64,000 nt of DNA, from the NCBI RefSeq assembly GCF_000315625.1, contig NW_005434660.1, forward strand, positions 680,738-744,737, in the 5' to 3' direction. The stretch comes from Guillardia theta CCMP2712 (Eukaryota; Protista; Cryptophyta). Below the pieces are notes generated by a model. That model ran no database searches, was not told the DNA's origin, and saw only the letters and a program-made list of their open reading frames with translations. The translations under genes were made by a program, and so were the position numbers. This document shows positions 27,860 through 49,175 of the stretch, piece by piece (positions within the stretch are counted from its first letter, which is position 1; each line of letters begins with the position of its first letter).

Positions 27860-30800
27860 CCCCACTCTCCCACTCTCCCTTTCTCTCGCTCGTTCTCCTA
27901 CACTTTTCTACCACCCACTCTCCCTCCCTCCTTCTCTCTCCATCTCTCTTCCTCCCTCCCACCCACTCCTCCTCCCCTCTCTTCGTCCTCCCTCTCCCTC
28001 CTCTTTACCTTTGCGTTCGTCATCCACACTCCCGTCCATTGCGCGCACACTCCAGCCCCGCAAGAAAGCTTGTCCTCCTGTCCCATCCCATCCTTTCCGC
28101 ACGCCTGGCCGTTCATGGGCCCACCGTAGCAGTAGAAGGACGGAGAAGAAACGTGGAGGTCCTGAGCAGGAGGAGACAAAGTCACGAGCAAGGAGGAGGT
28201 GGGAGAAGTTGCTTACCGGGGAGGAGCGGAAGAGAGGAAGGCTGACTCCGCGGTAGATGGTGTAACGAGCTAGGAGGGAAAGAGTGAGGAACCTTGGCGT
28301 CCTTTTTCCTTCTGGTATGTTCCCTCCCTCCCCTCCCCTCCCCTCCCCTCCCCTCCCCTCCCCTCCCCTCCCNNNNNNNNNNNNNNNNNNNNNNNNNNNN
28401 NNNNNNNNNNNNNNNNNNNNNNNNNNNNNNNNNNNNNNNNNNNNNNNNNNNNNNNNNNNNNNNNNNNNNNNNNNNNNNNNNNNNNNNNNNNNNNNNNNNN
28501 NNNNNNNNNNNNNNNNNNNNNNNNNNNNNNNNNNNNNNNNNNNNNNNNNNNNNNNNNNNNNNNNNNNNNNNNNNNNNNNNNNNNNNNNNNNNNNNNNNNN
28601 NNNNNNNNNNNNNNNNNNNNNNNNNNNNNNNNNNNNNNNNNNNNNNNNNNNNNNNNNNNNNNNNNNNNNNNNNNNNNNNNNNNNNNNNNNNNNNNNNNNN
28701 NNNNNNNNNNNNNNNNNNNNNNNNNNNNNNNNNNNNNNNNNNNNNNNNNNNNNNNNNNNNNNNNNNNNNNNNNNNNNNNNNNNNNNNNNNNNNNNNNNNN
28801 NNNNNNNNNNNNNNNNNNNNNNNNNNNNNNNNNNNNNNNNNNNNNNNNNNNNNNNNNNNNNNNNNNNNNNNNNNNNNNNNNNNNNNNNNNNNNNNNNNNN
28901 NNNNNNNNNNNNNNNNNNNNNNNNNNNNNNNNNNNNNNNNNNNNNNNNNNNNNNNNNNNNNNTTTTTGTCCTCTGGGATTTCAGGATAAGTCATCGGACC
29001 TCACAACCGTTTCCTGCCTTCCCTTGCCCACCCAGTGCCTCTCTCCCCATCTTTCCTCCCCCCCCCCTCGTGTCCATCCTCGATCTCCCTGCCTTCTTCA
29101 CCCTGTCGAAATGTCGGCAAAAACTCTCCGCTACAATCAAATTTGCTTTAAATCATCACTGAACACCATTGTTGTCTCCGTCCTTCCTTTCCTGACTTCT
29201 GTCTCCATCAGAAATACAACCGTCCTTGTACTCATCGTTGCCCTAGTCCTCGTCCTTGTCTCCCCCCTCCTCCTCCTCTCTCAACAACATCGTCGTCATC
29301 CACCTCCTCCTCTCTACCAGCAAGTGCAATCGAATGTCCGTCTCCTCCCTTGATGGCAGATATTTTCACTCCCGCATTCGAAAGCAGCGATACCCTGGAA
29401 GGAGTGTGAAAAAAGGAGTCAAACAAGGCTATCAGCTCCTCACAATCTTGGCTGGAACTCGCAGAAATTGCTCTGTTTGCAAATTTTATCGTTTCCAGTT
29501 GTCGAGAACCCTTGATCAACATGGTTATCATCTTCGTTACCACCTGCACCACTCCTACCAACCCCATTGTGATCATGATCATTATCTATCATCCACATCA
29601 TCTAAATCTATTATCATGATCTACTTTCGTGATCTACTATCATCATGTACCATCATCATCTACTATCATCATCTACTATCATCATCTACTATCATCATCC
29701 ACTATCATCATCGTCGTCATTGTCATCATTATCTCATCTATCGTCTATCATTATTTTGTGTTGTTGCTGTTATCATCTCTTCCGTGACTACTACATTCGC
29801 ACCAAGTTGTCCTTGGGTGTTCAATCCAAACGCGTACAGCTCTCCATACTCCCCGATAACTGCCAGTCACACCGTCAGAAGAACATCCGTTTCCTCCTTT
29901 CCCTCCTGTCCTCCCCCTCTCCTTTCTTCCCCTCGTTTCCTCCTCCGCTTCTCATTCGAACTCTTTCCCTCCTCCTCGTCCTCCTCTCTCTCGCTCCTCC
30001 CCTCTACCATCCTCCTCTTTGGTTTTCTGCCTCTTACCAAAACTGAATTGAGCCCCGCATCCGATACCCCTGCTCAATGTCATGCAAGAACCAAGAAGGT
30101 TAAAACCTTCACCGAGCCTTGTTGGTCAATGCCACAGCGAGAGGAGGCGACATGAAAGTTCTTCCTGCAGGTGAAGAAATTTGTCAGATAGTGAACACAC
30201 CTCATGACCTTGTACTCTCTTTTCCTTGCCGGCAACCTTTGTCATATTCTTCTGCCCTCGTCATATCATCGTCCTGCTAACTCTCTAGCCTAACTACATC
30301 CTCTCCCTTTCTTTGTCTTCCTCCCTCCTCCTCCTCCTCCTCCCTCCTCCTCCTCCCTCTCTCTCGTCGCTCCTCCTTACTCTCCCTCCTCCCTCTGTCC
30401 TCTTTTCCGCTTTACCTGTCTGTCCCATGTCTGCATTTCCCCACGACAGCACCGCTCCCCCGGGCATCAGCGCAAGTCCGTGGGTCGTTCCCAGGCACAG
30501 GTCCACAGCTCCTCTCAGCGCCGCTACTTCCGCAGGCTCTGCTACGTACTGACTTATGTTGGCGTACCCCAGCCCCAGCTGCTGCAACTGGTTCCTCCCG
30601 AAGCCGAACACGCTTCCTCCTCGTGTCATGACCATGCTGAAGTCGAGCCCTGCAAAAACTCTCTTCACAGGGGACCCCAGCACCGACGCGGTGAGCCTGG
30701 AGGAGACGATGGGGGAGAAGAAATAGCATGGCTGCATCTGTGCGCATCCAGAGCAGGAAGAGCAGTGGCTTTGTTCGCAGCATCCGTTCCCCAGACATCC

Positions 30801-31391
30801 CTGGTTTGCCGATCCCCATGCAAACACAGTCCCGTCCTCTGCCAGGGCGAGGACGTGCTCGCTGCCGGCCGAGACGTCAACGATGATGGATTGCTCGCCG
30901 TTGGATCCCGAGATGTTGGGGAAGACAACCTGCAAAGGGCTCTTCTGACAGAAGATAGCTCCTCCCCCTGCCTGACAGTTGCCCTGAAGGCAAAGACTGG
31001 CTACCACCCCGAGGTTTCCTGTCGTGCAGTCTCCGAAGCTGTACAGTCTTCCTTCGGACGTGAGGATCAGAGAATACTCTCCCATCCCTCCTCCTCCTCC
31101 CACCCCCGTTACGACCTTGGTCACGTTCTTTCCTCGCCACCAAGTGTTCAACTGGTCGGACAGCGCTGGAGAGGATATTTTCGCCACATTCGAGTCCGTG
31201 CCGAGCTGGCCTCTCTCGTTCGACCCCCACACCCACACGTTGCTCTCACTCCTTGCTGCCACCTCGTCGCCCACTGCAAGGTCCATGCTGTTGCACAGGA
31301 TACACACGAAGAGCAGTGACGACCAAAGGTGCATCGTTACACTCTGACTTAACAACATCCGGCGGTATCGTAGCAGCGCTCCTGCCTCCAT
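26240..31391 (-). CDS. Type I membrane protein: signal peptide, RCC1 repeats, (gap), Cys-rich motif, Fn3-associated/CHB_HEX_C-like domain, TM helix, basic cytoplasmic tail
   Basis: Signal MHLWSSLLFVCILC. RCC1 repeats VWVWGSNERGQLG, VSAGSEHVLALAEDGTVFAWG and LYAFGLNTQGQLG. Then VTITS..AKIFYT..EP..S.VYSDPF..TVRARAYLSGYKASDV and TM WLTYLLIAAGVVLVFLLVMLAVYFI-RRRKR. Continuity across the gap is inferred. Confidence 0.7.
27789..27857. repeat. (GCCT)n tetranucleotide microsatellite, intronic
   Basis: Directly visible. Confidence 0.95.
28373..28961. other. Assembly gap preceded by (CCCCT)n
   Basis: N bases. Confidence 0.99.
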
Positions 31392-31954
31392 CCGTCAAGT
31401 CCGAGGGATCAGCCCTCCTCTCGCCAAGGCTGAACCTTCACTGCCCCTTCCCTGGTCCTCTCCTCTTGACACTCAACAGGCGCCATCGCTACCTCGCCCT
31501 TCTGCAGCAACTACAGTCAAAGTAGGTCAAAGATACAACTTTATTGTAAACATCGAGCGGTAGCAGAATTCAGTACCACTGATGCGACTACAGTATGGAA
31601 TATACAATTAATTTATGATTTGTATTGACTTTGGTACAGATCGAAACTGCCAACCTGGCAGTAATCTTAAAACTCTAAAACTCTCTGACCATCATCGACA
31701 GGTGTTGCTATGCCCTCCATCCACAAGGGCACTGAAACGGCGGTTGAGAAGTCGTTATCCTCGTTGTTGCAAACGTAACGGATATTACAACCGTCCTGGA
31801 ATCACTGCAATGCTTCTTGTACCGGCTCCCCTCTCCCCCCCTCCTCGCGCCTCCCCCCGCCCCTGCTCTTCCTTGCCGCTCCCATCCTCGCAGTGAAGTG
31901 CTGCAAGGATCGTCTGGATCTGGTGGACTCGCCTCGTCCCGTCGGCCGGTCGCC

Positions 31955-36342: not shown

Positions 36343-36687
36343 CTTGCCGGGCCTCGCGCACCGTCCTCTCCCGCCATGGTAGCGGGACGACAGGGAAGCG
36401 GCATGCACACCTAGTTCTTCAGAGATTGAGGCCTCTTCTTCGTCCTCGTCCTCTTCCTCGTCGTCCTTCTCCTCCTCCCCTCATTTCTCTCCGTCCTGGT
36501 TCTTATTCCCTCTTCGCCTCCCTACCTTCTCTCCTTCACATCTCAAGCTTCGACTGCTGAACCTCTCCCAAGCTAAAAAGCAGCTCCCTACTTTCCGCGC
36601 CTTGATTTTCTGGTTGCTCTAGCTTATTGCGTGTCTCGTTTGGTTGTTGTGCCAAGTCCTTGAGCAGCAAAACAAAGTCTCTGTACG

Positions 36688-39600
36688 ATGTCGTCCGAGC
36701 GTCTAGCAACCAAGGCTAGCAGGCTGGCTTCCCAGCAAGACGAAGAAAGGAGGATGCTGCAAGGAAACTTTCGTGTAGAGAGGCGACACGATGACACTGT
36801 GCACTGTGCTGAGGGTGTTCCTGAAGGTAATCCATGAAGCATTCTTGTCTCTGCTGTATCTTGTTTGCCTGTTTTCCGTGAACTTCGTTTCACTAACTGT
36901 TTGTGCCCTCAGGATGGAAGGTTTTTGCGCAAGTCGAAAATCAGACAGCTCAAGTCTATTTTGTGTCACCGTGTGGAAAGATCATGACTCGCATCGAGCA
37001 AGTGCAAGAATTTCTGCAGCACACATCAGGGGACATTGAGCACAAAGATCCCAGGAAGGGAGACATCATCGAGGCAGAGATGGAAAACCCTGTCAAGGAT
37101 GGAGAAATCGAGTGGGTTAAGGGTGTTGTGAAGAAAGCCAACTTTCAAAAGAGAACCTTCAAGGTAGTGTTTAATATCCAAGAAGCCGATGAAGAAGGGT
37201 GCTGGGAGGAAGAATACTCTGTGAGATCACGAGTAATACCGTTTCTGCCCTGACATGTCTGTGTAGATGGATGCTATGGATGAATGGAGGTGGCCAAAGC
37301 TGACCATTGACATATTGCAAAAGTGCGCAGATAGTGTAGAACAGTCTTGTAGGGAAAGCCTGCATGAATCAGCCATTTACGACAAGAACGATGAGCAAAC
37401 TGGATTAGAACATGCTGTTAAGGTAGAGGCAGCCGATGGTGAATCAGACAATCTGAAGAAGTCTGTTGAGGTAATTACAGCCCTTGCTTGTTGCATGTTT
37501 GATTGCCTCACCGTGAACATGCAGCTCTTCGGAAAGAGGTTTCGGATTAAACTTCTCCTCAACACACTAAAGAAGATGGATGGACTCGGGAATTTTGAGA
37601 CGTTCAACCGTTGGAGTGATCTGGTGAGGAGAAGATGTACAATGATTGTCTCCTGATTGACACTCTTGAAATAGATGAATGCTTTGAAAATAGAACCCGA
37701 AAGCCTTGGACTGACTTATGAAAAAGTGAGATCAGTTCTGAAGAAGTTTTACAAGAAGCATTTGAACAAGTCTAAGGGAAAGGAGGGAACATCAGGCAAG
37801 TGGCCTGAAAGGTCTTCAATCAGTCCAATCAATAGTCCAGCTAAATCTCCGAAGTCAAAAGGCCGTCAAGTGGGGGATAGGCTTTCAGTGGGAATGGAGC
37901 TCGAAGCCGAGATGAGTAGTGAAAGTGGGGCTAAGGAATGGATGCGGGGCACTGTCACAGATATAAATCATAACAATCATACTTTTGAAATGGAATTCAA
38001 CGTGCAAACAAGGGATGAAGTTGGAAACTGGAAAGAAGTGTACAAGTTTCAGGAGGTTGACAAGGAATGGAGATTTCCTTCGGTGGTTCGCGAACCGTCA
38101 CCGACAACAGTGCAAGAATCCAGTGTGACAGACTGGCATGAAGTGTCAGTAGACAGTGAACAAAACCATTCCGCCGAACTTGCTTCACTGGAACCTACAG
38201 ACATTCAAACGGGATCGATTGATGTAAGCCGCTGCAGCTGCTGTTGTCTTGATTTGTTGTTGACATCCCAAGCAGAGCATCGAAGTAGCTGGGAGACATT
38301 GTAAATATGAAGACTTGTACAAGATCGTGAATGAGTTGGGTGGTTTCTCTGTTGTCGATAGCGCAAGGAAGTGGGCGCAAGTGGTACTCATGCTTATGCG
38401 CTCATTACTATCTTGTCTAATCTTGTTGCAGGCACGTGCTTTGAATGTGAACACAAGATTGCATCGAACGGCTGGTTCCAAGATTAAAGCCTTTTACAAG
38501 AGTTTTCATTTCCCCTCCCCGTCGGTTGCGTGCAAGGAAGATCCCGAGACTGAAGAAATTAGTAACAAGATACAAGTTGGAATGGAAATTGAAGCAGAAA
38601 TGGAAGATGGCAAAGGTGGAACAGAGTGGATTCGTGGAAAGATTACAAAACATGATAAGAAGAAAAAGTCTTTACATGTATTCTTCACTGTTCAAACTGA
38701 GACGGAAATCGGGGAATGGACCGATGAATACAGAATTGAAGACTATGGCACGGAATGGCGTTTCATTACACAAAACGAAGATACAATCGAAATATGTGAA
38801 ATAACTGAATCACAAATAGATCAAGACGAAGGAACCGATCCTAAGCTTGAGGAAATACCAGATGAAGCTATTCGAGTGAGTGATGTGAGACCGATCATGG
38901 TTTGTTGATGACCCTGATTGCGCAGATATGCTCAGTTAATATCAGACTCCGTAAGTTGTTCCACCTTGTCTACAATGAGGGTGGTCCTGACAGTTGCACC
39001 AATAATAAGAGATGGACATCAATTGTAAGATGGGGGTGGCGAGAGCTTGCCGATGGTGACTTTGGTGCAGGCTAAGAAGCTGACAATAGACCCAAAGAAG
39101 TTCACCAACTGTGCATTTCTGATGAAGAAGACCTACATGCACCACATCTACCCACTCGTCGATGATGTCAACACAAGGTGGCCACAGCCTGATGACGAAG
39201 TGTTGGTGAATGTGTCAGAGAATGGAAGGGAACATTGGAGAGTCGGAAAAGTCACATCTGTCGAGTCGTCCCTACGGACTTTCATGGTTAGGATGCATCG
39301 GTCAACAGGGCCAGAGACAGAGCATGAAAATCAAGACCTCTCACATCAAGAAGGCTCCCCTATGAAGCTCGATGCAAAAACGGAAAGCATGGAACCCTTC
39401 TCAGAGGTTGGGCCATTGAGGATGTCTTACTTGAACCGGGAATGGAAACGGGTCGACTCAGCTGAGGAGAAGGATATCAAGACTGAGGTGAAAGCGTTGA
39501 CTCGAGCCTATGCTGTAGTCATCGTGAGACAGGACGATCAGAATCAATTACATAGTGACAAGAAGTCAAGCTCAACAAGTCGGAAGAAGCGCGATCGTGA

Positions 39601-42600
39601 GGTAAGAAAGTTTGCTGTCTCCGACTCCCACTGAAGAAACGAGCTAGAGTGTTTTGGACCTCAATGGTACTGCACTTCACTTTTCGCCTGATCACAACTT
39701 GAAAAGCTCGCGAAAGGTTTTCAGTTCTTTGGTTTCCCTGTTCAAAATTCACCTCTTCCTAGGCAAAAGTTTTATCGCCTTTTGGTGAAATTGAGGCCAG
39801 TTCTTCATCGCCAAGCACTCGTGACGTCACACGAAGGGTGAGATGACGGCAATACCATTGAAGTTGGCTTACTTGACTGCAGGATACAAATGATGATATT
39901 CAGAATAAGATCAAATTTCAAGAATTTTTACAAACGCTGAAAGCCGGGATGCAGGTCGAAGTCAAGATTGACAATGACAACAGGACAAGACACTCTAAAT
40001 GGAAAGTTGCAACAATCAAATTCATAAGTCATGCAAAACAGTATTTCAAGATTGAACTTGGGCCTGAAGATGGAGAGGCAATTGAGAAATATTATTTCTC
40101 CGAAGAAGGGACTCGGTGGAGAACGGTGGCCGTTGCCAAGAAAGAATCCGAGATTCAGACCTCAGTGCAAAGGTCAGGTGCCGCAAGGAAGAGGCAGGTG
40201 CCGTCAGTCGGGGCTGTGGTGGAGATTTTATTCAGTGATAACAAGTGGTATCGGGGTAAGGTAGTCTCAGAAGAACCAGGTGGCCTGTGGAGAGTTTGCT
40301 TCGAAGATGGGGACGAAGACACCTTTCAGTGGCCCGATCCGGAAGTCAGGATCATTTGCAAGAGCAGGAAAAGTCGAAGTGTGGGAAATGATCAAGAACT
40401 CAGCATGCAAGTAACAGAGATAAGAGTTGGTACACTCGTCAAGGTGAATTTTGCAGAACTTGCAAGATGATACCTGTTTGTCTTAGTTTGACCATCTTGT
40501 CAGGTACTATTTGATGACGGTGTACGGTACATCGGAACAGTTGTCACCAGGAACTGGCAAACCAATGAGATCACGGTAATCTTTGAAGATGGCGAGAAGC
40601 ACGAGATCGAGTTGCCTTGTGCTGACATTCAGATCGCCTCGCACGCGAAAGAGCTGGAGGAATTTCAGGCTAGCATGGACCCAGATTCATCGGAAGGAAA
40701 TGCTCCCTGGTGGTTCAGCTACCCTCGAAGACATGTACTGGAAGTGCAGTCGGAGGACGATATTTGCCCCTGGAAGAGTGTGGTGATTAGACCTCCGAGA
40801 AAGCAGAGAAGAGCTCGGGTATCGGCTGCAAGATCCAGAGGTGATACCAACCAGTCACAACAGACGCAGGAGGCAACAAGTGCTGAAAATACTCCTGATG
40901 CTTCGGCGCTCCGAAAGATTGGAAGAAAGAAAAGGCTCGAGAGTAGAGATGAATTGGAGAATGCAGAAGGAAAGTCAGGACAGCGGAGGAGCATTTCTTC
41001 GTATCAAGGGGATGCTGATGCTGGGCGAGGCAGTGAACGTAAAAAGGAAGATAGGAAGAAAGAGAAGGAAGAGAAGCGAAAAGACAAAGAAGCAGGAACC
41101 AAGAAACCCCAAAAGAAAAAGGATCCGAGCATGCAAGTTGAGAAGCAGCTGGAGACTTTCCTCAATCAATCATCTAAAAGATCCGGTGCTCCACGTGAGC
41201 TCGAGAAGTTGTTCCTCCAAGAAACACCCTCAAAGCTTCAAGAAGATGAAGACACATCTGACTTTGTGGATGCTCTTTGCCTGTACATGCCGCCGACCGA
41301 CCTGCTGAACACCAAAGACTTCTGCTTGATTTGCGGCAGCTCGTCAGACCGAGACGACTTTCTATTCTGCAGGGATTGTGGAGACTCATTCCACAAGTAC
41401 TGTTTCGACCTCACCTTGAAGATTCCCCCAGAGAAGCGGAACATGTGGAGATGTCCGGCTTGTAGGATCTGCGAGGTGTGCAAAGGCGAGGAGAACTGGG
41501 ACGAGATGCTCTGCTGTGATGAGTGCGACAGAGGGTTCCACATCTACTGCTTGAGGCCTCCTCTGAAGCAGATCCCAGCGGAGGGCTGGAGGTGCAGCGA
41601 GTGTGTCCGTTGCCTGAGCTGTGGCTCCAAGACCCCCGGGCCCAAGGGGAGCGATCGGTGGCGAAAGGACTACACCTTGTGCAGTTCGTGCTGGGTGGAG
41701 TATGAGAAGAAGAACTACTGCCCGATCTGCAAAGTCGTCACCTCCTCCAAGGACATCAAGATGGTCAACTGTGACTCGTGCCAGATGTGGGTGCACGTAA
41801 CGTGCGGTGGGATCGACAATGCGACGTACAACAAGATGGCTGAGGCCGAAGAAGATGTGCCATGGGACTGCCCGCGGTGTCGAGGAGAAATCGAAGTGTC
41901 TGACGATGACATGGACGAGCGATATCCACTCCCTGGGCCTGCCAAGGTCATTCAAACCCAGCAGAATCTGGAGGAATTTTGCACTGCCAAGGTGAAGGAA
42001 CTGAGCAAACTGTGCGAGGCCGTTGAGCAATCCTTTCGAGCTGGTGACGCTAAGGAGGGTCAGCAAGAGCAGGAAGGGGATGGCACACCAGATGCCAAGA
42101 CACAAGGAGCTGAGAAGAATGGGGATGCAAAGATGTCAGAAGCCGACAAGGATGATGATGTTAAGATGTCAGAAACTGAGAAGGAAGACTTCCAGGTTGG
42201 TCAAGCTGAGGACAAAGATAACTCGAAGACGTCAGAAGTTGAGGAGAAAGACGATACAGAGATGTCAGAAAATAAGAAGAAAGATGTTTCAGACATGTCA
42301 GAAGATAAGAAGAAAGATGTTTCAGAGATGTCAGAAGATCAGAAGAAAGAGGATACACAGATGTCAGAAGATCAGAAGACAGAGGATCCGAAGACGTCAG
42401 AAGCTGAGAACAAGGCCGAGGATGTCTCCCCACCGGAGACGACTGCTCGAACTAACGGTGATCAGATGGAAATCACCGAGGTCATAAAGGATGACGAGAA
42501 GATTTCACAAGGAGAATCTGTTGAGAGAGTGGAGTCGACCGATGACGTGACGCCGAAATCTCAGAGCAAAGAATCTCAAGATTCTCCCGCACCTGTTGCT

Positions 42601-44771
42601 GAACCTGCCTCTAAGGCACCGGAAACAAATGGTGTGTCTCAGCAATGTAACGGAAGCGAGGGCCACGTAACGGTCAAAGAGCTGACACAATCGCCGTGCC
42701 CAAGTACGGAGCTCCGAGGCGACAGAGAAGTGAAGTTCGATGCTCCGAGACTTGACGCTACGATGCCGCGAGACGAGGATCGACGCCTTGAAGCGACTGC
42801 CCCGCCTCAGAATGTCACGGTGTCTCCTCAGCCGCCGCCGGTGGGAGTTCAAGGCAGCAACAGGATCCCAGCACAGGGCGAGGCGTCGAAACAAGAGGAT
42901 AGCAATGAAGACCAAGTGAATGAGTCGGCGTCATCCCCCAATTTGACCGAGAACCCACAAAAGTTTCAACCGTCGGGTGATCAAATGTTGAAAAGCTCCC
43001 AGGAATCAGCCGAAACCAGTCAAATCAAGGATGACCCAGCAGGAATTGAGGAAAAGCAAAATCAAGATCAAGATGCGTTGCCAGTGGCCGATGAGCAGGA
43101 CGAGACGGAACGTGAAAGCAAGGGCAGCATGATGGAGGTGGATGATAATGACGATCAGCTGCTGCGACGGCAGAAAATTGTAGCTATCGGGCAGATCAAG
43201 AGAGAGTTACACCGATTGGAAAGGAACATTGACCGGCATAAGTATCTGAATTTGATGGATTTCTATGGCGACGTCCAGCTAGCTCTGAACAAGTCAAAGA
43301 TGCCTGCGTCTATCGAGAAGTGGATCGCAGAACTGCGGTCAAAGGCTGACGAGGCCATGCAGGATGCGGCTAGGAGGAGCGCAGCATCGATAAAAGAGCA
43401 ATTTTCCCCGCAGATCTTGAACAAGAATCGGGTTTGGGCGGTAGAATTGCCTGCGTTTCAGCTCTCCGAGTTTGGTTCAGGAAGCCCGAATGAAATGTAC
43501 GGACAAGACTCTGCGTCCAAGCGCCTGTACAGGACTAAGAAAGGCATGGATGTTGAATTCAATGCCGGAAACGCTTCGAACAAGAACCTTGAATTCAAAT
43601 GTAGACTCTTTGCGACGCGGGTGAGGTTGAGTTTGGGGGCAGAGTCAAATGTCTACCAGCAAGTTCTTCAGGTCTGTGACACAGTAGACTGGAATATTAT
43701 CACTGTCGAGAAATTGTTCGCCGTTCTCAAACAGATTCTTTGCCGGAACATCGACCTGCTCAAGTTGTTTCAAAGCATCATGGTCTCCAGGTGTTTCGAG
43801 ATGCAACCTTCATCGCAGGGCTACACTCCACTCAAAAGATCACAACAAGAGCAAGCCATGCAGTTTTGTACCGAGGTGCAGAAGCTGTATGGGAAGCATT
43901 CCGATGTCTACCGTCAGTTCTTGCAGATCATGCACAACTATGCCGAGCAGGGTCGAAACACAGGCAGGACGGTACAAGAAATCCGCGCGCTGTTCTACGA
44001 CCAGCCAAGTCTGATCTACGGTTTCAGAGAGTTTTTGCCTGCTCCGTTTCAAGGGCAATGCCTTCCAGTCTGTTTTCTTGACAAGACACAAAAAACTGCG
44101 GACAAAGCCAGCGCTGCTGCCAAGACTGCCAAACCTGCAGGTGTCGCAGCAGGGTCTATCCCTTCGCAACACAGTCAACCCGCTCCTCCTCAGCACAGTC
44201 AGCATGTTTCATCGATGGCCCAAGATCAGCCTCAACGAACGCCTTTCGCAAGAATTGAGCAGCGAGGTCATGTGCAAGCGGGAAGGCCCGGCAGTGCATC
44301 GTTCACTGGAGGCGCGTTCGCCCCTCATACCCATACTCAATATCATCCCAGCTCGCAAGTGTACGGCATGAAGCAAGGAGATCAGTTCTTGGGAACAGCC
44401 TCGGCGAGCTCAGGGCCGATGAAAAGCTTTGGTAGTCAACCTTCGACCCAGACCGCGACATTTCCCCAGAATACTGCCTGTTCACCGTATGGCGCCAGAC
44501 CTACCAGCTTACCCAACATGAACTCCAACATGAACGCCAGCAATGCTTTCAAGACAAACATGGGACCAGCACAGAATGTAGCGCTGAACAGCATGCAGCA
44601 AGGGGTAAGGAGATAGCTATGTGTTCTCTCTGGGTTCTTCTGACTTGTTATAGCAGACTGCTTTCTCCAGTGCGAGCCAGCAGCAGGCTGGAGGTTGGGC
44701 TCCCAGCAATCCACATCGAGAGCCACCTAGTCACGAGCAAATGTCGAGACAGCAGCAGCAGCAGCAGCAGC

Positions 44772-44807
<36 letters not shown>

Positions 44808-44852
44808 TCCAGCAGCAGCAGCAGCAGCAGCTCCAGCAGCAGCAGCAGCAGC

Positions 44853-44888
<36 letters not shown>

Positions 44889-44903
44889 TCCAGCAGCAGC
44901 AGC

Positions 44904-44934
<31 letters not shown>

Positions 44935-44948
44935 TCTCCAGTATCAGC

Positions 44949-44982
<34 letters not shown>

Positions 44983-47900
44983 ATCAGGACTTTCGAAAGG
45001 GACGAATCCGCTGCTCAGTCAGACAAGCAGCGGCCATCAGGGTCAGGCGGGCTTGCTTGACCAGTCCCAACAGAGGTTTCAACTCCGCGCTGATCAGAGT
45101 GCGCTGGATAGGCAGACCAGCGCCTTCGGCCTCGCTAAGAGACCTTCTGCTGCCGCTGACTCTACATGGCTCCTCAAGGGTCAGGACAACCGAATGGTGC
45201 CCAGCCCGGTCTCACTGGAGCAGCAGCGAGTGCCGCTATCGTCACAGGGTGAGCTGATTGATCGGAACACTCTCAACCTGACTTGCATGAGCAGGAGCCA
45301 TGTCAGTGAACAAGTCTCCTGCCCCCGTTGTCTCGCCCGCCTCCATATCGAGTCGCGTTGGGCCCGCTTTCACTAACGTAGGCCACCAGAATGGGGTCGC
45401 CAACGTTCAGATGGCGGCGAACTCTCTGCTTGCGAAGCAGCAGCTCTCTTACTCGGACGCGGCGTCAGGGAACTTCGTTGCAGCAGCTCGTCCGGCAGAC
45501 AACTTGAGCATGATCAACGCAACTAGAGATACGGGGGCTGTGAAGGACCAAAACCAACCCAACCTAGTGTTCGAGTCGATTCCACAAGTCGACGGGTGCG
45601 ATCTGGACGATCAAGCTTCTCAAAGCTCTATGGACGAAACCGGCACAAGCAGCTTCAAACCGAGCCCCAGCAACTTTTCTACCTTGGTCTCGCATCAGCC
45701 CATGGCGCAGCAGCTCAACGGGCCGATGATGATGGCACACCAGACACAAGCTTTGCACACTCTATTGCAGCAGAACTCCGTCTCTCGCCCCCTGCTGTCT
45801 CAGACGTCGATCTCTCATCCGTCCTCCTTCCCCATGAACAGCTTGCAGCTGCAGACCTCGTTCTCCTCGGAGCTCCTGGCGTCAAAGCTGTCTCACATGA
45901 GTGCTCCGATGGTTTCTCTGCCGCAAGTTTCTCTCCCTGCTTCCCTCTCGCACATTGCGACGCCACATTCGTCCATGCCCCTTCTTGCAAGGCCACAGAC
46001 GTCAGCATCTTCGGCGCTGGTCCTACAGACGGCACTGCCACAGCTTCAGTCTAGTCTGTCGCATCAGCAGCTGTCGCAGAACCTGCAGCTGGCACAGCAT
46101 CATGCCGTCGGACAGCAGCGATCCATGGTTGGGGTGTCCCTCACGTCTTCTTACGATTCATCACTCAGACGTGAAGCCCCAGCGCTTGCACCAACAGCAT
46201 CACCAGCTCCAGCTCCAGCTCCAGCTCCAGCTCCAGCTCCAGCTCCAACAGAGGAGGCATCTTCAGCCCCAACTGCTGGGGTCCCAGCTCAACCTCAGCA
46301 GGAACCGACAGCGCAGGAGGCTGCCTACGACTCCCCGAGAATGAGCTCGGAACGAACAAGGACAGAAAATGTACGTAACCGCCCGCTGCAATCGGAGAGA
46401 GCGGCTGCTCTGGCTTCGACCCGGGCCAGGAAGGAGAGTCCTCCTCCCCCGCACAACAAGCGCATCATCCGCGACGCTGTGATAGCTGGGGTGTCGGTGA
46501 AGAGTGAGGAGGTCAGGGCGATTGTCGATGAGCTGGGAGGGATGGGAATTTGCAACGAGCAGAGGCTGTGGCCTCAGGTGGCCAACAGGCTCAACATCGA
46601 CAGGCAACGGTGTCACTCCTACTGCGCGAAGCTTCGAGGTCTGTACCTGGGATACAGCATGGAGCCTCCGAGGATCAGGAGCCGCCCCGAGACGAGGAAC
46701 AGAGATACGGGAACGCCCGTGCATGGCAGGAAGGCGGGGCCGTCGATCAGCAAGCTTGTGAAGCAAGATCTGAACCTGAACGCTGAGGGAGGAGGAGACG
46801 TGAAAGCTGCACAGCCGAGCTCCGATGTCATCGGGACCCTCAAGACGGTCAGGGTGGACCGAGAGCCCTACGATTTCTTTATTCCCATCAAGGTTGGGAC
46901 CAGCAACCGCTCCAAGTCGCTGCTGACGGCGAAGCCTCGGCTGCAACGGGCGGCCACCATGGCTCAGGCGCTCTGGGTTGAGAGCATCTTCGAGGCTGTG
47001 TCAAAGACGGAGGCGGCGCGGACGCGATGGCAGGAGAGGAACAAGAAGAAGGCCAAGGTGAGAGGATGGGACCTCAAGACTCTTGGCAGGCAGATCGAGA
47101 GCTGCTCCATCGCCCTCGGCATCCTGAAGCTCTCCAATGGAAAGCTGCAGTACCTGGGTGGCCACAGCCGAATCGCCTCCATCGAGTCCGTGCTGCCGAG
47201 TGGGCTGACGAGCCTGGAGGAGCACGAGGTGCGACGAGCTCTTATGCAGGTGAGCCCCAGCGCGTGTGGGCGCGACCCTCGAATCTGCTCGCTGTGCAAG
47301 ATCAACGGAGACTGTGTGGTGCAAGGGCGACTCATCTACGTTGAGGTCGGCGTGTGGGCGCACGTGAACTGCCTGTGCTGGTCCAAGGGGATCTACGAGG
47401 TCCCGGTCAGGCGCAACGTGGGCAAGATCAGCATGCTGTGCAAGGTGCACGATGTGATCAAGAAGTCCCGCAAGAATCGCTGCGACTTCTGCGGGTGCAT
47501 GGGGGCGACCGTTGAGTGCTCGTCAGTCAACTGCTGCTCGACGTCGCACTTCGGCTGCTCCGTGCTCAACGACTGGATGATGTTTGCGGAGCATCACGTG
47601 TTCTGTGCCAACTGCAAGGAGACGGAGGAGGTCCAGAAGCTGGGAGGGGCCGCCAACGCCTTCACTCCGCTGCACCTGAGCAAGCTCGGTGCTCGCCTCC
47701 TGCGGGTTATGCCTCGGACGAAGCCGAGGATGGAGGGGAGAGAGGCGGACAAGAAGAAGCTGATCCCCAAGAAGCGGAAGAACCCGGGAGAAGCTCCGGA
47801 AGGTCAGAAGAGCTCAGCCAAGAGCTTGACGTCGGAGGGAGAGAAGAGAAGTGGCGAACCCGGAGTGTGCGAGTCTCCTACGGCAGCCGCCGAGGACGTG

Positions 47901-49175
47901 AAGATGAAGGACGGAGAGGCTTTCAACGGCGGGGAAGGAGAGCGGCAGGGGACGGAGTCTTGCGGGCTGCCCTGCGTGAATGATCGGGAGTTTGACGAGG
48001 AGCTGGACGCGTACGAGAACAATCTCGTTACCAAGGTGGCGCAGGACCTGCAGCAGGGCAGCGTCATGGCTCGGGTGGGCTCGCTGACCGTCTACCGCCT
48101 GGGAAGGATCAAAGTTGACGACGACAACTTCCACTCGGAGCTCGCCATCTACCCCGTTGGCTACATGTCCACCCGACTCTTCTTCGCCCCCGGGGAGCTG
48201 CCGACCAAGGGCGGGCCGGCCGTGCGCCGGGTGCTCTACCGCTGTCAGATCCTCATGGACGAGGGGACCGGGAAACCCATGTTCTGCGTGTCGGTGAACG
48301 GGCTGACGTACAAGGCTGACAGCGCGTCGGTGGCGTGGGAGATGGCGACGAAGAGGAAGCTGAGGGAGAGGAAGAAGCTGAAGGTGCATGCCAACGAGGG
48401 TCAGTGCGACAACGTAACTGAGATGTTCATGGCGTGCTCCTACGCCATCGACGGTGACTACATGTTCGGCGTGACCGTCGGCCCCATCGCCATGGCGCTC
48501 GAGGCCCTGACGGAGTCGACGCTGCTCTTCAACTATCACTCTCGCTTCGGGATCTGGGGCAAGAACTACGTGCGGCTGAACCTTTCGGGGTGTGCGCGAG
48601 CCGAGCCGTTCAAGAGGAGGAAGAAGATGAGCACGGCAAAGGTCCTCCGGAACGCGGAGAACGAGGACGCGCGACCTGACGTCGCCAACGTGGGCAAGCC
48701 AGCCAAGGAGGAGGAGAGGAGTATCAAGGCCAAGTACTTGCAGCTGAGGAGCGAGCCGAGGACGGTGGTGAGAAGGAGCCCCATCCACAACCTCGGGTTG
48801 TTCGCTACGAGGAGGATCGACCGCAACGACATGGTGATCGAGTACGTCGGGGAGCTGATCCGACCCATCGTAGGCGACATTCGAGACGACCTGGCGCTGG
48901 AGAAGGGAAAGAGCACGTACATGTTTCGGCTCGACGACAACTACATCGTCGACGCCATGTTCGCGGGCAACGCGTCGCGCTTCATCAACCACTGCTGCGA
49001 CCCCAACTGCTACTGCCAGGTGGTGACTGTGGATGGAGTGAAGCATATCGTGCTGTTTGCCATGCGGGACATAGAGGCGGACGAGGAGATCACCTACGAC
49101 TACAAGCTCCCGATCGAAGAGGTCAAGGTCATCTGCCATTGCGGTTCCGCCAAGTGCCGCGGATACATGAACTAA
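36688..49175 (+). CDS. Trithorax/MLL (KMT2)-like histone H3K4 methyltransferase, about 3,900 aa, about 14 exons
   Basis: MLL1-type PHD1-3 cluster (41317-41880), ePHD (47271-47615), FYRN/FYRC, WIN motif GCARAEP, SET (RFINHCCDPNC, EEITYDY) and post-SET CHCGSAKCRGYMN. The N-terminal MBD-like/Tudor/ARID exons join in frame through canonical short introns. Confidence 0.9.
42125..42415 (+). repeat. Coding tandem repeat of about 33-36 bp (GATGTCAGAAGAT core; MSEDxKKxD peptides)
   Basis: About 8 imperfect copies visible in both DNA and protein. Confidence 0.85.
44750..44980 (+). repeat. Coding (CAG)n polyglutamine tract interrupted by CTC (Leu)
   Basis: Directly visible, in frame within the exon at about 44657-45248. 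Confidence 0.92.

What the first reader, a model, noticed from the sequence alone, without database searches (positions are those of the whole stretch)
36688..49175. Giant Trithorax/MLL-like methyltransferase with an unusual MBD-Tudor-ARID-PHD-PAH-SET architecture
Seen: manual splicing gives one ORF with MBD-like, (Tudor-ARID)x3, four more Tudor-like domains, PHD1-3, a bromo-like segment, two PAH domains, polyQ, a fourth ARID, ePHD, FYRN, FYRC, WIN, SET and post-SET. The last Tudor, the PHDs and the PAHs share one exon (40504-44604), so that part of the fusion is not a splicing guess. Known: the PHD linker VRCLSCGSKTPG..W..DYTLC..C...NYCPIC matches animal MLL1/Trx, which use CXXC and AT hooks rather than Tudor/ARID/PAH. 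Tudor plus ARID is typical of ARID4/RBBP1 and PAH of Sin3, both co-repressor components. Inference: a lineage-specific all-in-one chromatin hub joining an activating H3K4 writer to Sin3-complex-like modules. I know no described protein with this architecture.
Basis: partly seen in the sequence, partly recalled or inferred. Interest (0 to 1): 0.85.

Follow-up and report, generated by a model that had tools for sequence, protein, structure and literature searches.

The report
Reader-loaded MLL-type histone methyltransferase gene
This is one real, expressed gene for a roughly 3,900-residue MLL/Trithorax-type histone H3K4 methyltransferase that also carries an MBD, seven Tudor-like barrels, four short ARID domains and a Sin3-type PAH domain, a combination I found described nowhere and otherwise saw only in a few uncultured relatives.

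Summary

**One transcript.** A spliced RNA contig covers 36356 to beyond 42349 as one piece. It removes 13 GT..AG introns and joins the MBD, Tudor and ARID exons to the PHD exon in one open frame of 2,414 codons. The two junctions to the SET exon are still predictions. Supporting them, RNA contigs cover the polyQ exon, and a relative has PAH, ePHD, WW and FYRN in a single ORF.

**Domains.**
- Confirmed by profiles: MBD, PHD1-3, one PAH (Sin3 PAH1-like), FYRN, FYRC, the WIN motif, SET and post-SET.
- Four ARID modules are real but lack the N-terminal fifth of the Pfam profile. They look more like KDM5/JARID ARIDs than ARID4.
- The Tudor-like units are supported at fold level, and two at marginal sequence level.
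- The second PAH and the bromo-like segment are doubtful.

**Relatives.** The PHD cluster is closer to animal KMT2C than to MLL1. The SET domain forms its own branch. The same domain order occurs on at least six sets of environmental contigs and in one NCBI assembly. None of the roughly 300 other stored proteins combines PAH with the PHD cluster.

**Verdict.** This is a new variant of the KMT2 family. "Sin3-complex-like hub" over-reads the evidence. Function is inferred, not tested.

The parts
36688..49175 (+). Whole coding region, about 3,876 codons in 16 exons. E1-E14 are set by RNA: 36688-36826, 36913-37220, 37267-37470, 37525-37623, 37675-38223, 38276-38383, 38432-38875, 38926-39024, 39071-39487, 39533-39601, 39648-39716, 39763-39837, 39883-40443, 40504-44604. 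E15 44654-45248 and E16 45382-49172 are predicted.
   Evidence: RNA joints, open frame; predicted 3' junctions, RNA word shares; stop TAA.
36903..37031 (+). MBD (methyl-CpG-binding domain family)
   Evidence: Pfam PF01429, 24.3 bits against a cut-off of 21. All 3 of window plus two relatives match, best E 4.6e-5. PDB profile matches to MBD11, MBD2 and SETDB2 MBD are only weak.
37044..37220 (+). Tudor-like barrel T1 ('IEAEM...EW' type)
   Evidence: Profile A3 scores 64.3 bits here; fold evidence as for T3.
37525..37773 (+). ARID module 1, split by intron 37624-37674; the weakest of the four
   Evidence: Aligns with modules 2-4. Part of the module HMM that finds true ARIDs. Not found by Pfam on its own.
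37864..38091 (+). Tudor-like barrel T2
   Evidence: Profile A3, 116 bits.
38276..38515 (+). ARID module 2, split by intron 38384-38431
   Evidence: Pfam ARID 21.7-22.9 bits on the first half alone.
38549..38779 (+). Tudor-like barrel T3 (the unit that was modelled)
   Evidence: AlphaFold2 mean pLDDT 81.4, five-stranded barrel. Foldseek top matches are Agenet, SGF29 and PHF20L1 Tudors at E about 0.02-0.15. VIA-align Z 6-7 to SAWADEE, UHRF1 TTD, Spindlin1, PHF1 and SETDB1 Tudors.
38926..39160 (+). ARID module 3, split by intron 39025-39070
   Evidence: Pfam ARID 23.1 bits on the first half.
39188..39445 (+). Tudor-like barrel T4 (weak call)
   Evidence: Barrel HMM E 0.015 only; no match in relatives.
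39919..40140 (+). Tudor-like barrel T5
   Evidence: Barrel HMM 23.3 bits, E 4e-6.
40210..40335 (+). Tudor T6 (PTM/DIR17 and Tudor_5 type)
   Evidence: PF21743 at 23.9 bits in the window and 29.1 bits, above the 27.2 cut-off, in relative L003. PDB profile matches RDM15, 53BP1 and KDM4A Tudors at E 0.016-0.06.
40414..40638 (+). Tudor T7, split by intron 40444-40503
   Evidence: Alignment A8 with uninterrupted relatives; PHF19 and MTF2 Tudor matches at E 0.3-0.8.
41323..41880 (+). PHD1-3 cluster
   Evidence: Pfam PHD E 4.6e-27, three stretches; 5,228 database relatives at E 0.001 or better, the best animal ones KMT2C-like.
43150..43390 (+).
   Evidence: Conserved in 5 relatives. TAF1 bromodomain 2 match at E 0.005 over 31 residues. 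pLDDT 50-77 and no bromodomain fold match.
43570..43785 (+). Four-helix module PAH-A (possible divergent PAH)
   Evidence: pLDDT 73-90. hhalign to PAH-B gives P 5.6e-4, in register over 60 columns, against controls at P 0.6. No PAH fold match and no Pfam hit.
43837..44073 (+). PAH-B, a true Sin3-type paired amphipathic helix domain, closest to PAH1
   Evidence: Pfam PAH E 5.3e-12. Profile against PDB: Pst3 and Sin3 at E 7.5e-18, Sin3B PAH1 at 6e-12. Z 11.9, rmsd 1.7 over 69 residues to the Sin3-Ume6 structure.
44654..45248 (+). PolyQ-rich exon (boundaries predicted)
   Evidence: RNA contig runs X1-X4 hold 0.57-0.74 of the words of 44500-45500.
46476..46652 (+). ARID module 4, uninterrupted
   Evidence: Pfam ARID 24.1 bits, at the cut-off.
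47361..47618 (+). ePHD (zf-HC5HC2H)
   Evidence: 24.1 bits against a cut-off of 29.1. Same position before FYRN in relatives.
48063..48548 (+). FYRN and FYRC
   Evidence: Pfam E 3.3e-14 and 1.7e-4, both above cut-off.
48588..48605 (+). WIN motif GCARAE
   Evidence: Aligned with GCARSE of KMT2B and KMT2C. This stretch is 85-89% identical in relatives.
48792..49172 (+). SET and post-SET
   Evidence: Pfam SET E 5.8e-26. The NH.C.PNC, YDY and C.CG...C columns are invariant against KMT2A, KMT2B, KMT2C and SET1.

Best explanation
One expressed nuclear gene encodes a protein of about 3,900 residues in the KMT2 (MLL/Trithorax) family. The genome is probably that of the cryptophyte Guillardia theta, judged from its size only. 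The C-terminal ePHD-FYRN-FYRC-WIN-SET-postSET part most likely methylates histone H3 lysine 4, with WDR5 held by the WIN motif; this is inferred from conserved motifs. Instead of the CXXC and AT hooks of animal MLL1, the targeting part is an N-terminal MBD, three barrel-plus-ARID units, four more Tudor-like barrels, PHD1-3, a fourth ARID, and one Sin3-type PAH domain between the PHD cluster and the ePHD. The likely logic, all of it inferred, is multivalent targeting. The ARIDs, and perhaps the MBD, would hold DNA. The barrels and PHD fingers would read histone marks. The PAH would dock amphipathic-helix motifs of DNA-binding factors, bringing the writer directly to them. The family is conserved in several uncultured relatives; the triple barrel-ARID array seems expanded in this lineage.
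For: One transcript for the 5' 6 kb. PHD1-3 and PAH lie in one exon. PAH, ePHD, WW and FYRN lie in one 1,717-residue ORF of relative L001, and likewise in L004. The same domain order is seen on L001, L004, L014/L015, L005, L006 and L017. RNA covers the polyQ link. Domain identities. Catalytic and WIN motifs conserved. Among 323 stored proteins, including about 150 best PHD-cluster relatives out of 1.84 billion representatives, only this clade has the PAH.
Against: The junctions 44604/44654 and 45248/45382 were not seen in RNA; retention of the 49-nt intron would stop the protein 3 codons later, before SET. No biochemical function was tested. The ARIDs lack Pfam positions 1-20 and three of four score below the cut-off. 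I did not check the MBD's base-contacting residues. The barrels match Tudor folds only at middling Z (6-7). The raw-read RNA run X17 gave only 6 reads, so expression level and strand are not measured.
Confidence: 0.72

Rival explanations
1. There are two products. A reader-only protein (MBD to PAH) ends just after 44604 through intron retention or polyadenylation, and the SET part is made from its own start. The giant fusion would then be at most a minor isoform.
For: The 3' junctions are predictions. The frame of exon 14 meets a stop 9 nt past the donor. An ATG lies at 45300.
Against: Only 49 nt separate exon 14 from the next open frame. RNA contig runs hold most words of 44500-45500: 0.74 in X1, which fits introns of 49 and 133 nt being removed. 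Relatives keep PAH and FYRN in one ORF. PHD1-3 upstream and ePHD-FYR-SET downstream are the two halves of every MLL-type protein.
Confidence: 0.1
2. The accessory modules are decayed relics. The truncated ARIDs, the MBD-like segment and the atypical barrels no longer read DNA or histone marks and serve only as spacers or protein-protein scaffolds.
For: Scores are at or below Pfam cut-offs. ARID profile positions 1-20 are missing. The barrels have no significant PDB sequence match. Barrel T4 has no match in relatives.
Against: The modules are conserved at 35-50% identity across relatives, with invariant aromatic and glycine positions. The intron position inside the ARID modules is kept. The barrel model is confident.
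Confidence: 0.2
3. One reading: a hub that physically unites an H3K4 writer with Sin3/ARID4-type co-repressor machinery.
For: A true Sin3-type PAH is present. Barrels stand next to ARIDs, as in ARID4. ARID4A/B Tudor structures appear among weak matches at E 0.18-0.58.
Against: No HDAC-interaction domain, Sin3 C-terminal domain or RBB1NT was found at E 0.1 or better. The ARIDs match KDM5, JARID2 and ARID1 best, not ARID4. The genome has separate canonical Sin3-like genes with several PAHs.
Confidence: 0.08

Closest known systems
Animal KMT2A/B (MLL1/2, Trithorax) and KMT2C/D (MLL3/4, Trr)
   Same: PHD cluster, ePHD, FYRN, FYRC, WIN motif, SET and post-SET in the same order, with catalytic motifs conserved. 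The PHD cluster is 33-36% identical to KMT2C-like proteins.
   Different: No CXXC, AT hook, HMG or clear bromodomain was found. It has instead an MBD, seven Tudor-like barrels, four ARIDs and a PAH. Its SET domain branches outside both animal subfamilies and outside SET1.
Sin3 co-repressor scaffold (PAH1)
   Same: One four-helix PAH domain, with E 7.5e-18 to Pst3 and Sin3 and Z 11.9 to a Sin3 PAH structure.
   Different: It has a single solid PAH instead of three or four, and no HDAC-interaction or C-terminal Sin3 domains. True Sin3-like genes lie elsewhere in the genome.
KDM5/JARID and ARID1 ARID domains; ARID4 (RBBP1) as an architectural analogue
   Same: The helix-loop-helix core (GGF...W..V) matches. 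Twelve of 13 PDB profile matches are ARID structures, the best being Lid/KDM5 at E 0.0018. In ARID4, Tudor-type barrels also stand beside an ARID (from general knowledge).
   Different: The modules lack the first fifth of the Pfam profile. There is no JmjC and no RBB1NT, so this is not a member of those protein families.
Protist and stramenopile MLL-like proteins (for example Saprolegnia SPRG_20781, Chrysophaeum CTAYLR_002467)
   Same: PHD, bromodomain, ePHD, FYRN, FYRC, SET layout; 29-39% identity in the C-terminal part.
   Different: None of the listed ones carries PAH, ARID or MBD in the precomputed Pfam column. That list covered only proteins of about 710 to 2,260 residues.

Membership tests
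KMT2 / MLL-Trithorax H3K4 methyltransferases | C-terminal SET plus post-SET with SET1/MLL-type catalytic motifs | tested here: met
   Pfam SET E 5.8e-26; the motif columns are invariant against KMT2A, KMT2B, KMT2C and SET1.
KMT2 / MLL-Trithorax H3K4 methyltransferases | FYRN and FYRC before SET | tested here: met
   Both are above the Pfam cut-offs.
KMT2 / MLL-Trithorax H3K4 methyltransferases | WIN motif (WDR5 interaction) upstream of SET | tested here: met
   GCARAE aligns with GCARSE of KMT2B and KMT2C. Binding itself was not tested.
KMT2 / MLL-Trithorax H3K4 methyltransferases | PHD finger cluster and ePHD | tested here: met
   PHD x3 at E 4.6e-27. The ePHD scores 24.1 bits, below the 29.1 cut-off, but sits at the expected place and is conserved.
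KMT2 / MLL-Trithorax H3K4 methyltransferases | H3K4 methyltransferase activity | not testable with these tools
   This needs an enzyme assay.
Animal KMT2A/B subfamily (MLL1/Trx) specifically | SET domain groups with KMT2A/B; CXXC domain present | tested here: not met
   The window plus P0001 form their own clade (100/99 support) outside the KMT2A/B clade. No CXXC among Pfam hits. The PHD cluster is closer to KMT2C-like proteins.
Sin3 family | Several PAH domains plus the HDAC-interaction domain | tested here: not met
   One solid PAH only; no Sin3_corepress or Sin3a_C hit at E 0.1 or better.
ARID domain superfamily (domain level) | Match to the ARID profile and to true ARIDs | tested here: met
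   Modules 2-4 score 22.9, 23.1 and 24.1 bits against a cut-off of 24.1; module 1 was not found by Pfam. The module HMM finds Pfam-certified ARIDs of the same genome at 20-62 bits and KDM5 P0300, with no decoy among 1,814 sequences. Twelve of 13 PDB matches are ARIDs. Profile positions 1-20 are absent.
Tudor 'royal family' (domain level) | Five-stranded SH3-like barrel related to methyl-lysine readers | tested here: inconclusive
   The fold is met: pLDDT 81, Z 6-7 to many Tudor, Agenet and SAWADEE structures. However, Z is in the range the tool calls common, and there is no significant sequence match for the T1-T3 type. For T6 a relative passes the Pfam cut-off. An aromatic cage was not examined.
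MBD family (domain level) | Match to the PF01429 profile; methyl-CpG-contacting residues | tested here: inconclusive
   The profile is met in the window and two relatives. PDB matches are weak. The base-contacting residues were not examined.

The most novel reading that the evidence does not exclude
The PAH domain lets an H3K4 writer bind the same amphipathic-helix (SID-type) motifs of DNA-binding factors that Sin3/HDAC complexes use. In this lineage one factor motif could then recruit either a deacetylase or a methyltransferase, giving a direct competition switch between repression and activation. The multi-ARID, MBD and barrel array would add DNA and histone-mark reading.
Probability: 0.12. 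Interest if true: 0.75.

Novelty: new variant of a known kind. Interest (0 to 1): 0.5.

Why it matters
KMT2 enzymes are usually brought to chromatin by CXXC, AT hooks, PHD fingers or partner proteins. Here a conserved protist lineage has built the targeting parts into the enzyme itself. These include a PAH domain, which I know mainly from Sin3 co-repressors, and an array of ARIDs and Tudor-like barrels. This gives a natural test case for how domain shuffling rewires a chromatin writer. It also gives a compact set of small modules (barrel, short ARID, PAH) whose ligands can be tested in vitro. For genome annotation, it shows that this locus is one gene with 13 RNA-confirmed small introns (12 of 45-60 nt, one of 86 nt) plus two predicted ones, which automatic models can easily break apart.

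Tried and rejected
**Steps that led nowhere**
- Looking for an annotated or transcript-derived full-length protein failed. Searches limited to 0.55-1.75 times the query length gave no 100% match. The one identical fragment, P0123 (149 aa), could not be traced.
- A sequence profile of the T1-T3 barrels against PDB gave only chance-level matches.
- The MBD profile against PDB gave only weak MBD matches.
- The raw-read run X17 gave 6 reads, too few for strand or expression level.
- Literature searches found no description of this architecture. One search failed on term length.
- Pfam on the spliced ARID modules could not be run, because a spliced sequence has no reference. I used exon-wise Pfam, a module HMM in the sandbox and a first-half profile instead.

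**Readings considered and rejected or left open**
- The bromodomain reading got one short TAF1 match, a low-confidence model and no fold match, so it is left unresolved.
- The second PAH had no PAH match in the fold search and only a weak hhalign signal.
- Assigning the SET domain to an animal KMT2 subfamily was rejected by the tree.
- Neighbouring ORFs are unrelated or carry no Pfam family; one is an RCC1-repeat ORF on the minus strand at 30297-31394.
Full report
**Setting.**
The window is contig C14:680738-744737 of an 87,145,349-base assembly in 669 contigs. Its genes have short GT..AG introns. The size matches the 87.2 Mbp given for the cryptophyte Guillardia theta (PMC9756366). That identification is an inference from size only. 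Neighbouring ORFs are unrelated or carry no Pfam family; one is an RCC1-repeat ORF on the minus strand at 30297-31394.

**Is it one gene?**
- Stop-to-stop frames on the plus strand between 36.7 and 49.2 kb form a chain of open segments. Two are very long, at 1,374 and 1,294 codons.
- I laid three likely RNA contig runs and one raw RNA run on 36350-42349. One 5,524-nt contig of run X1 (depth 231) covers 36356 to beyond 42349 as one piece. Thirteen stretches are skipped, each with GT..AG ends.
- Contigs of X2, from another study, show all 13 joints, and X4 shows two of them.
- After the stated cut shifts the introns are 36827-36912, 37221-37266, 37471-37524, 37624-37674, 38224-38275, 38384-38431, 38876-38925, 39025-39070, 39488-39532, 39602-39647, 39717-39762, 39838-39882 and 40444-40503.
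- With these removed, the frame from ATG 36688 is open for 2,414 codons to 44604. An in-frame stop lies just upstream of that ATG.
- The MBD, Tudor-like and ARID exons are therefore joined to the PHD/PAH exon in real RNA.
This does not change the domain content.

**The 3' half.**
The link to the 3' half was not seen directly, because only one call of 6 kb was allowed.
- The best splice candidates are 44605-44653 (49 nt, with an alternative acceptor 3 nt later) and 45249-45381 (133 nt, with in-frame alternatives ending at 45294 or 45306).
- These give exon 15 (polyQ, 44654-45248) and exon 16 (45382-49172), with stop TAA at 49173-49175. The total is about 3,876 codons.
- Indirect support 1: runs whose contigs were shown or appear to be spliced RNA hold 0.94 (X1) of the sampled words of 40492-46491. 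They hold 0.57-0.74 of 44500-45500. The value 0.74 is what removal of 49 + 133 nt predicts. If the polyQ exon were silent, at most about 0.2 would be held.
- Indirect support 2: in relatives the same parts are joined without any splicing guess, as described below.

**Domains confirmed by profiles.**
- Pfam on the raw frames gave MBD (24.3 bits, cut-off 21), PHD (three stretches, E 4.6e-27), PAH (E 5.3e-12), FYRN (E 3.3e-14), FYRC (22.1 bits, cut-off 21) and SET (E 5.8e-26).
- ARID (twice), ePHD and several Tudor-type families fell just under their cut-offs.
- The MBD is matched in the window and in both relatives tested. PDB profile matches to MBD structures are only weak, and I did not check the base-contacting residues.

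**ARID modules.**
- Four modules align with each other.
- In a genome-wide six-frame search, three of them match Pfam ARID positions of about 21-62 or 24-83, at 22.9, 23.1 and 24.1 bits.
- An HMM built from the four modules, spliced in the sandbox, finds the Pfam-certified ARIDs of the same genome at 20-62 bits. It also finds the ARID of a KDM5 protein, with no decoy among 1,814 sequences.
- A 34-column profile of only the first halves gives 13 PDB matches, 12 of them ARID structures. Lid/KDM5 is best at E 0.0018, followed by JARID2, JARID1A/B, ARID1A/B and SWI1.
- They are real ARIDs that lack the first fifth of the profile. They are nearer to KDM5/JARID types than to ARID4.
- The three N-terminal modules are each split by a phase-0 intron at the same place, after W-x-x-[VIL]. 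Relatives end the corresponding ORF at the same point. This points to duplication of a barrel-ARID unit together with its intron.

**Tudor-like barrels.**
- Units T1-T3 share an 'IEAEM...EW...F.V.F.V...E.GEW..EY' pattern with relatives, and T5 matches their HMM.
- They have no significant PDB sequence match.
- The AlphaFold2 model (pLDDT 81.4) is a helix followed by a five-stranded barrel.
- Foldseek's top rows are Agenet, SGF29, Tip60 and PHF20L1 domains at E 0.02-0.15.
- VIA-align gives Z 6-7 to SAWADEE, UHRF1 TTD, Spindlin1, PHF1, BAHCC1, RDM15 and SETDB1 Tudors. The Z range is one the tool calls common, so this is fold-level support only.
- T6 and T7 are of the PTM/DIR17 or Tudor_5 kind. 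They score 23.9 bits here and 29.1 bits, above cut-off, in relative L003. PDB profile matches to RDM15, 53BP1 and KDM4A are at E 0.016-0.06.
- T4 is a weak call with no match in relatives.

**PAH and bromo-like segments.**
- A profile of the PAH region from six sequences matches Sin3-family chains at E 7.5e-18, and isolated PAH1 domains at about 1e-10 to 1e-12. PAH2 domains match only at about 1e-3.
- In the model this module aligns to Sin3 PAH structures at Z 11.9, rmsd 1.7 over 69 residues.
- The four-helix module before it (PAH-A) is confidently modelled. It aligns in register to PAH-B by hhalign at P 5.6e-4, against controls at 0.6. It has no Pfam match and no PAH fold match, so I rate it doubtful.
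- The 'bromo-like' module is conserved. Its only support is a 31-residue match to TAF1 bromodomain 2 at E 0.005. The model there has low confidence and no bromodomain match.

**Catalytic end.**
- Against KMT2A-like, KMT2B, KMT2C and fungal SET1 sequences, the NH.C.PNC, YDY and post-SET cysteine columns are invariant.
- GCARAE sits where KMT2B and KMT2C have the WIN motif GCARSE.

**Relatives.**
- Scoring 1,200 residues of the big exon against 1.84 billion representatives gave two close relatives and then animal KMT2C-like proteins (E 1e-67 to 1e-45). KMT2A/B-like proteins came only at about 1e-26 to 1e-30.
- In a SET-domain tree, the window and P0001 (a JGI metagenome protein, 69% identical by BLASTP over the C-terminal part) form their own clade with 100/99 support. 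It lies outside the animal KMT2A/B, KMT2C/D and SET1 clades, and its position is unresolved.
- Contigs carrying relatives show the same order on one strand.
  - L004 (NCBI GCA_977064365.1) has MBD, three barrels, ARID, PHD1-3, PAH, ePHD, FYRN/FYRC and SET.
  - L001 (a marine metagenome) has three barrels, ARID, PHD1-3, PAH, ARID, ePHD, FYR and SET. PAH, ePHD, WW and FYRN lie in one 1,717-residue ORF.
  - L014/L015 run from the barrels to FYR.
  - L005, L006 and L017 run from the barrels to PAH.
- Relatives have one ARID before the PHDs where the window has three, so the barrel-ARID array looks expanded here.
- None of the 120 C-terminal relatives listed carries PAH, ARID or MBD in its Pfam column. 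That list was limited to about 710-2,260 residues.
- I did not determine the taxa of the relatives.

**How it most likely works.**
- Shown: the gene, its 5' splicing, the domain set and its conservation.
- Inferred from what is known of KMT2 enzymes: H3K4 methylation by SET/post-SET within a WDR5-containing core, held through the WIN motif.
- Inferred from the domain families: the ARIDs, and possibly the MBD, bind DNA. The PHD fingers and barrels read histone marks. The PAH docks amphipathic helices of DNA-binding factors, as Sin3 PAH1 does.
- The genome also has separate Sin3-like genes with several PAHs. The PAH here is therefore an added module, not a replacement for Sin3.
- No HDAC-interaction domain or RBB1NT was found. 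'Sin3-complex-like' is an analogy only.

**Novelty.**
Seven literature searches and one full-text look-up (Grau-Bové et al., bioRxiv 10.1101/2021.11.30.470311) gave no description of a KMT2 with PAH, ARID or MBD. Lineage-specific domain accretion in chromatin proteins of protists is a known theme. I therefore class this as a new variant of a known kind and rate its interest as moderate.

Noticed in passing
window 37624-37674, 38384-38431, 39025-39070; L004:3625, L006:2514, L005:1283: The three N-terminal ARID modules are each split by a phase-0 intron at the same position, after W-x-x-[VIL]. Relatives end the matching ORF at the same point. This suggests an old intron that was copied along with the barrel-ARID unit.
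   Followed up: partly
window 36827-40503: Twelve of the 13 RNA-confirmed introns are only 45-60 nt long and one is 86 nt. Two of them (37471-37524 and 38384-38431) are multiples of 3 with no stop, so they are invisible to frame inspection.
   Followed up: yes
P0001 residues 86-112; L001:6039-11189; L004:7789-12927: Relatives carry a WW domain (E about 1e-9) between the ePHD and FYRN. Pfam found none in the window's C-terminal exon.
   Followed up: partly
L001:6036-6038 (same in L002): An in-frame TAG separates the PHD ORF from the PAH-FYRN ORF of this relative. Flanking sequence suggests a short intron inside the PAH-A module; L004 changes frame at the same place.
   Followed up: partly
G000:C29:429389-429967; C58:467929-468114; C24:522656-522769: Further copies of the 'IEAEM...EW' barrel occur elsewhere in the genome. 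There are two adjacent copies on C29 at 74-77 bits, so the barrel is not unique to this gene.
   Followed up: no
G000:C45:491275-494721: One 1,466-residue open frame holds both a FYRN match (29.9 bits) and an ARID match (28 bits). It may be a KDM5-like or another FYR-ARID protein.
   Followed up: no
G000:C15:50556-51374 (L007): A 503-residue frame with two full-length ARIDs is the best genomic match to the window's ARID-module HMM (61.6 bits). It is a possible paralogue or source of the modules.
   Followed up: partly
window 36350-36549: RNA contig depth is about three times higher here (717 in X1). Other contigs break at 36437-36467 in a Ser-rich repeat region, so another transcript or a repeat may abut the 5' UTR.
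   Followed up: no
L003:4004-7714, P0289, P0290: Relatives show a helicase-associated (HA, PF03457) match just after PHD3. It scores 24.5 bits, below cut-off, in L003 and is listed without a weak mark for P0289. The window shows none.
   Followed up: no
window 44653/44656: Tandem acceptors (TAGCAG) at the predicted intron end could add or drop one glutamine.
   Followed up: no
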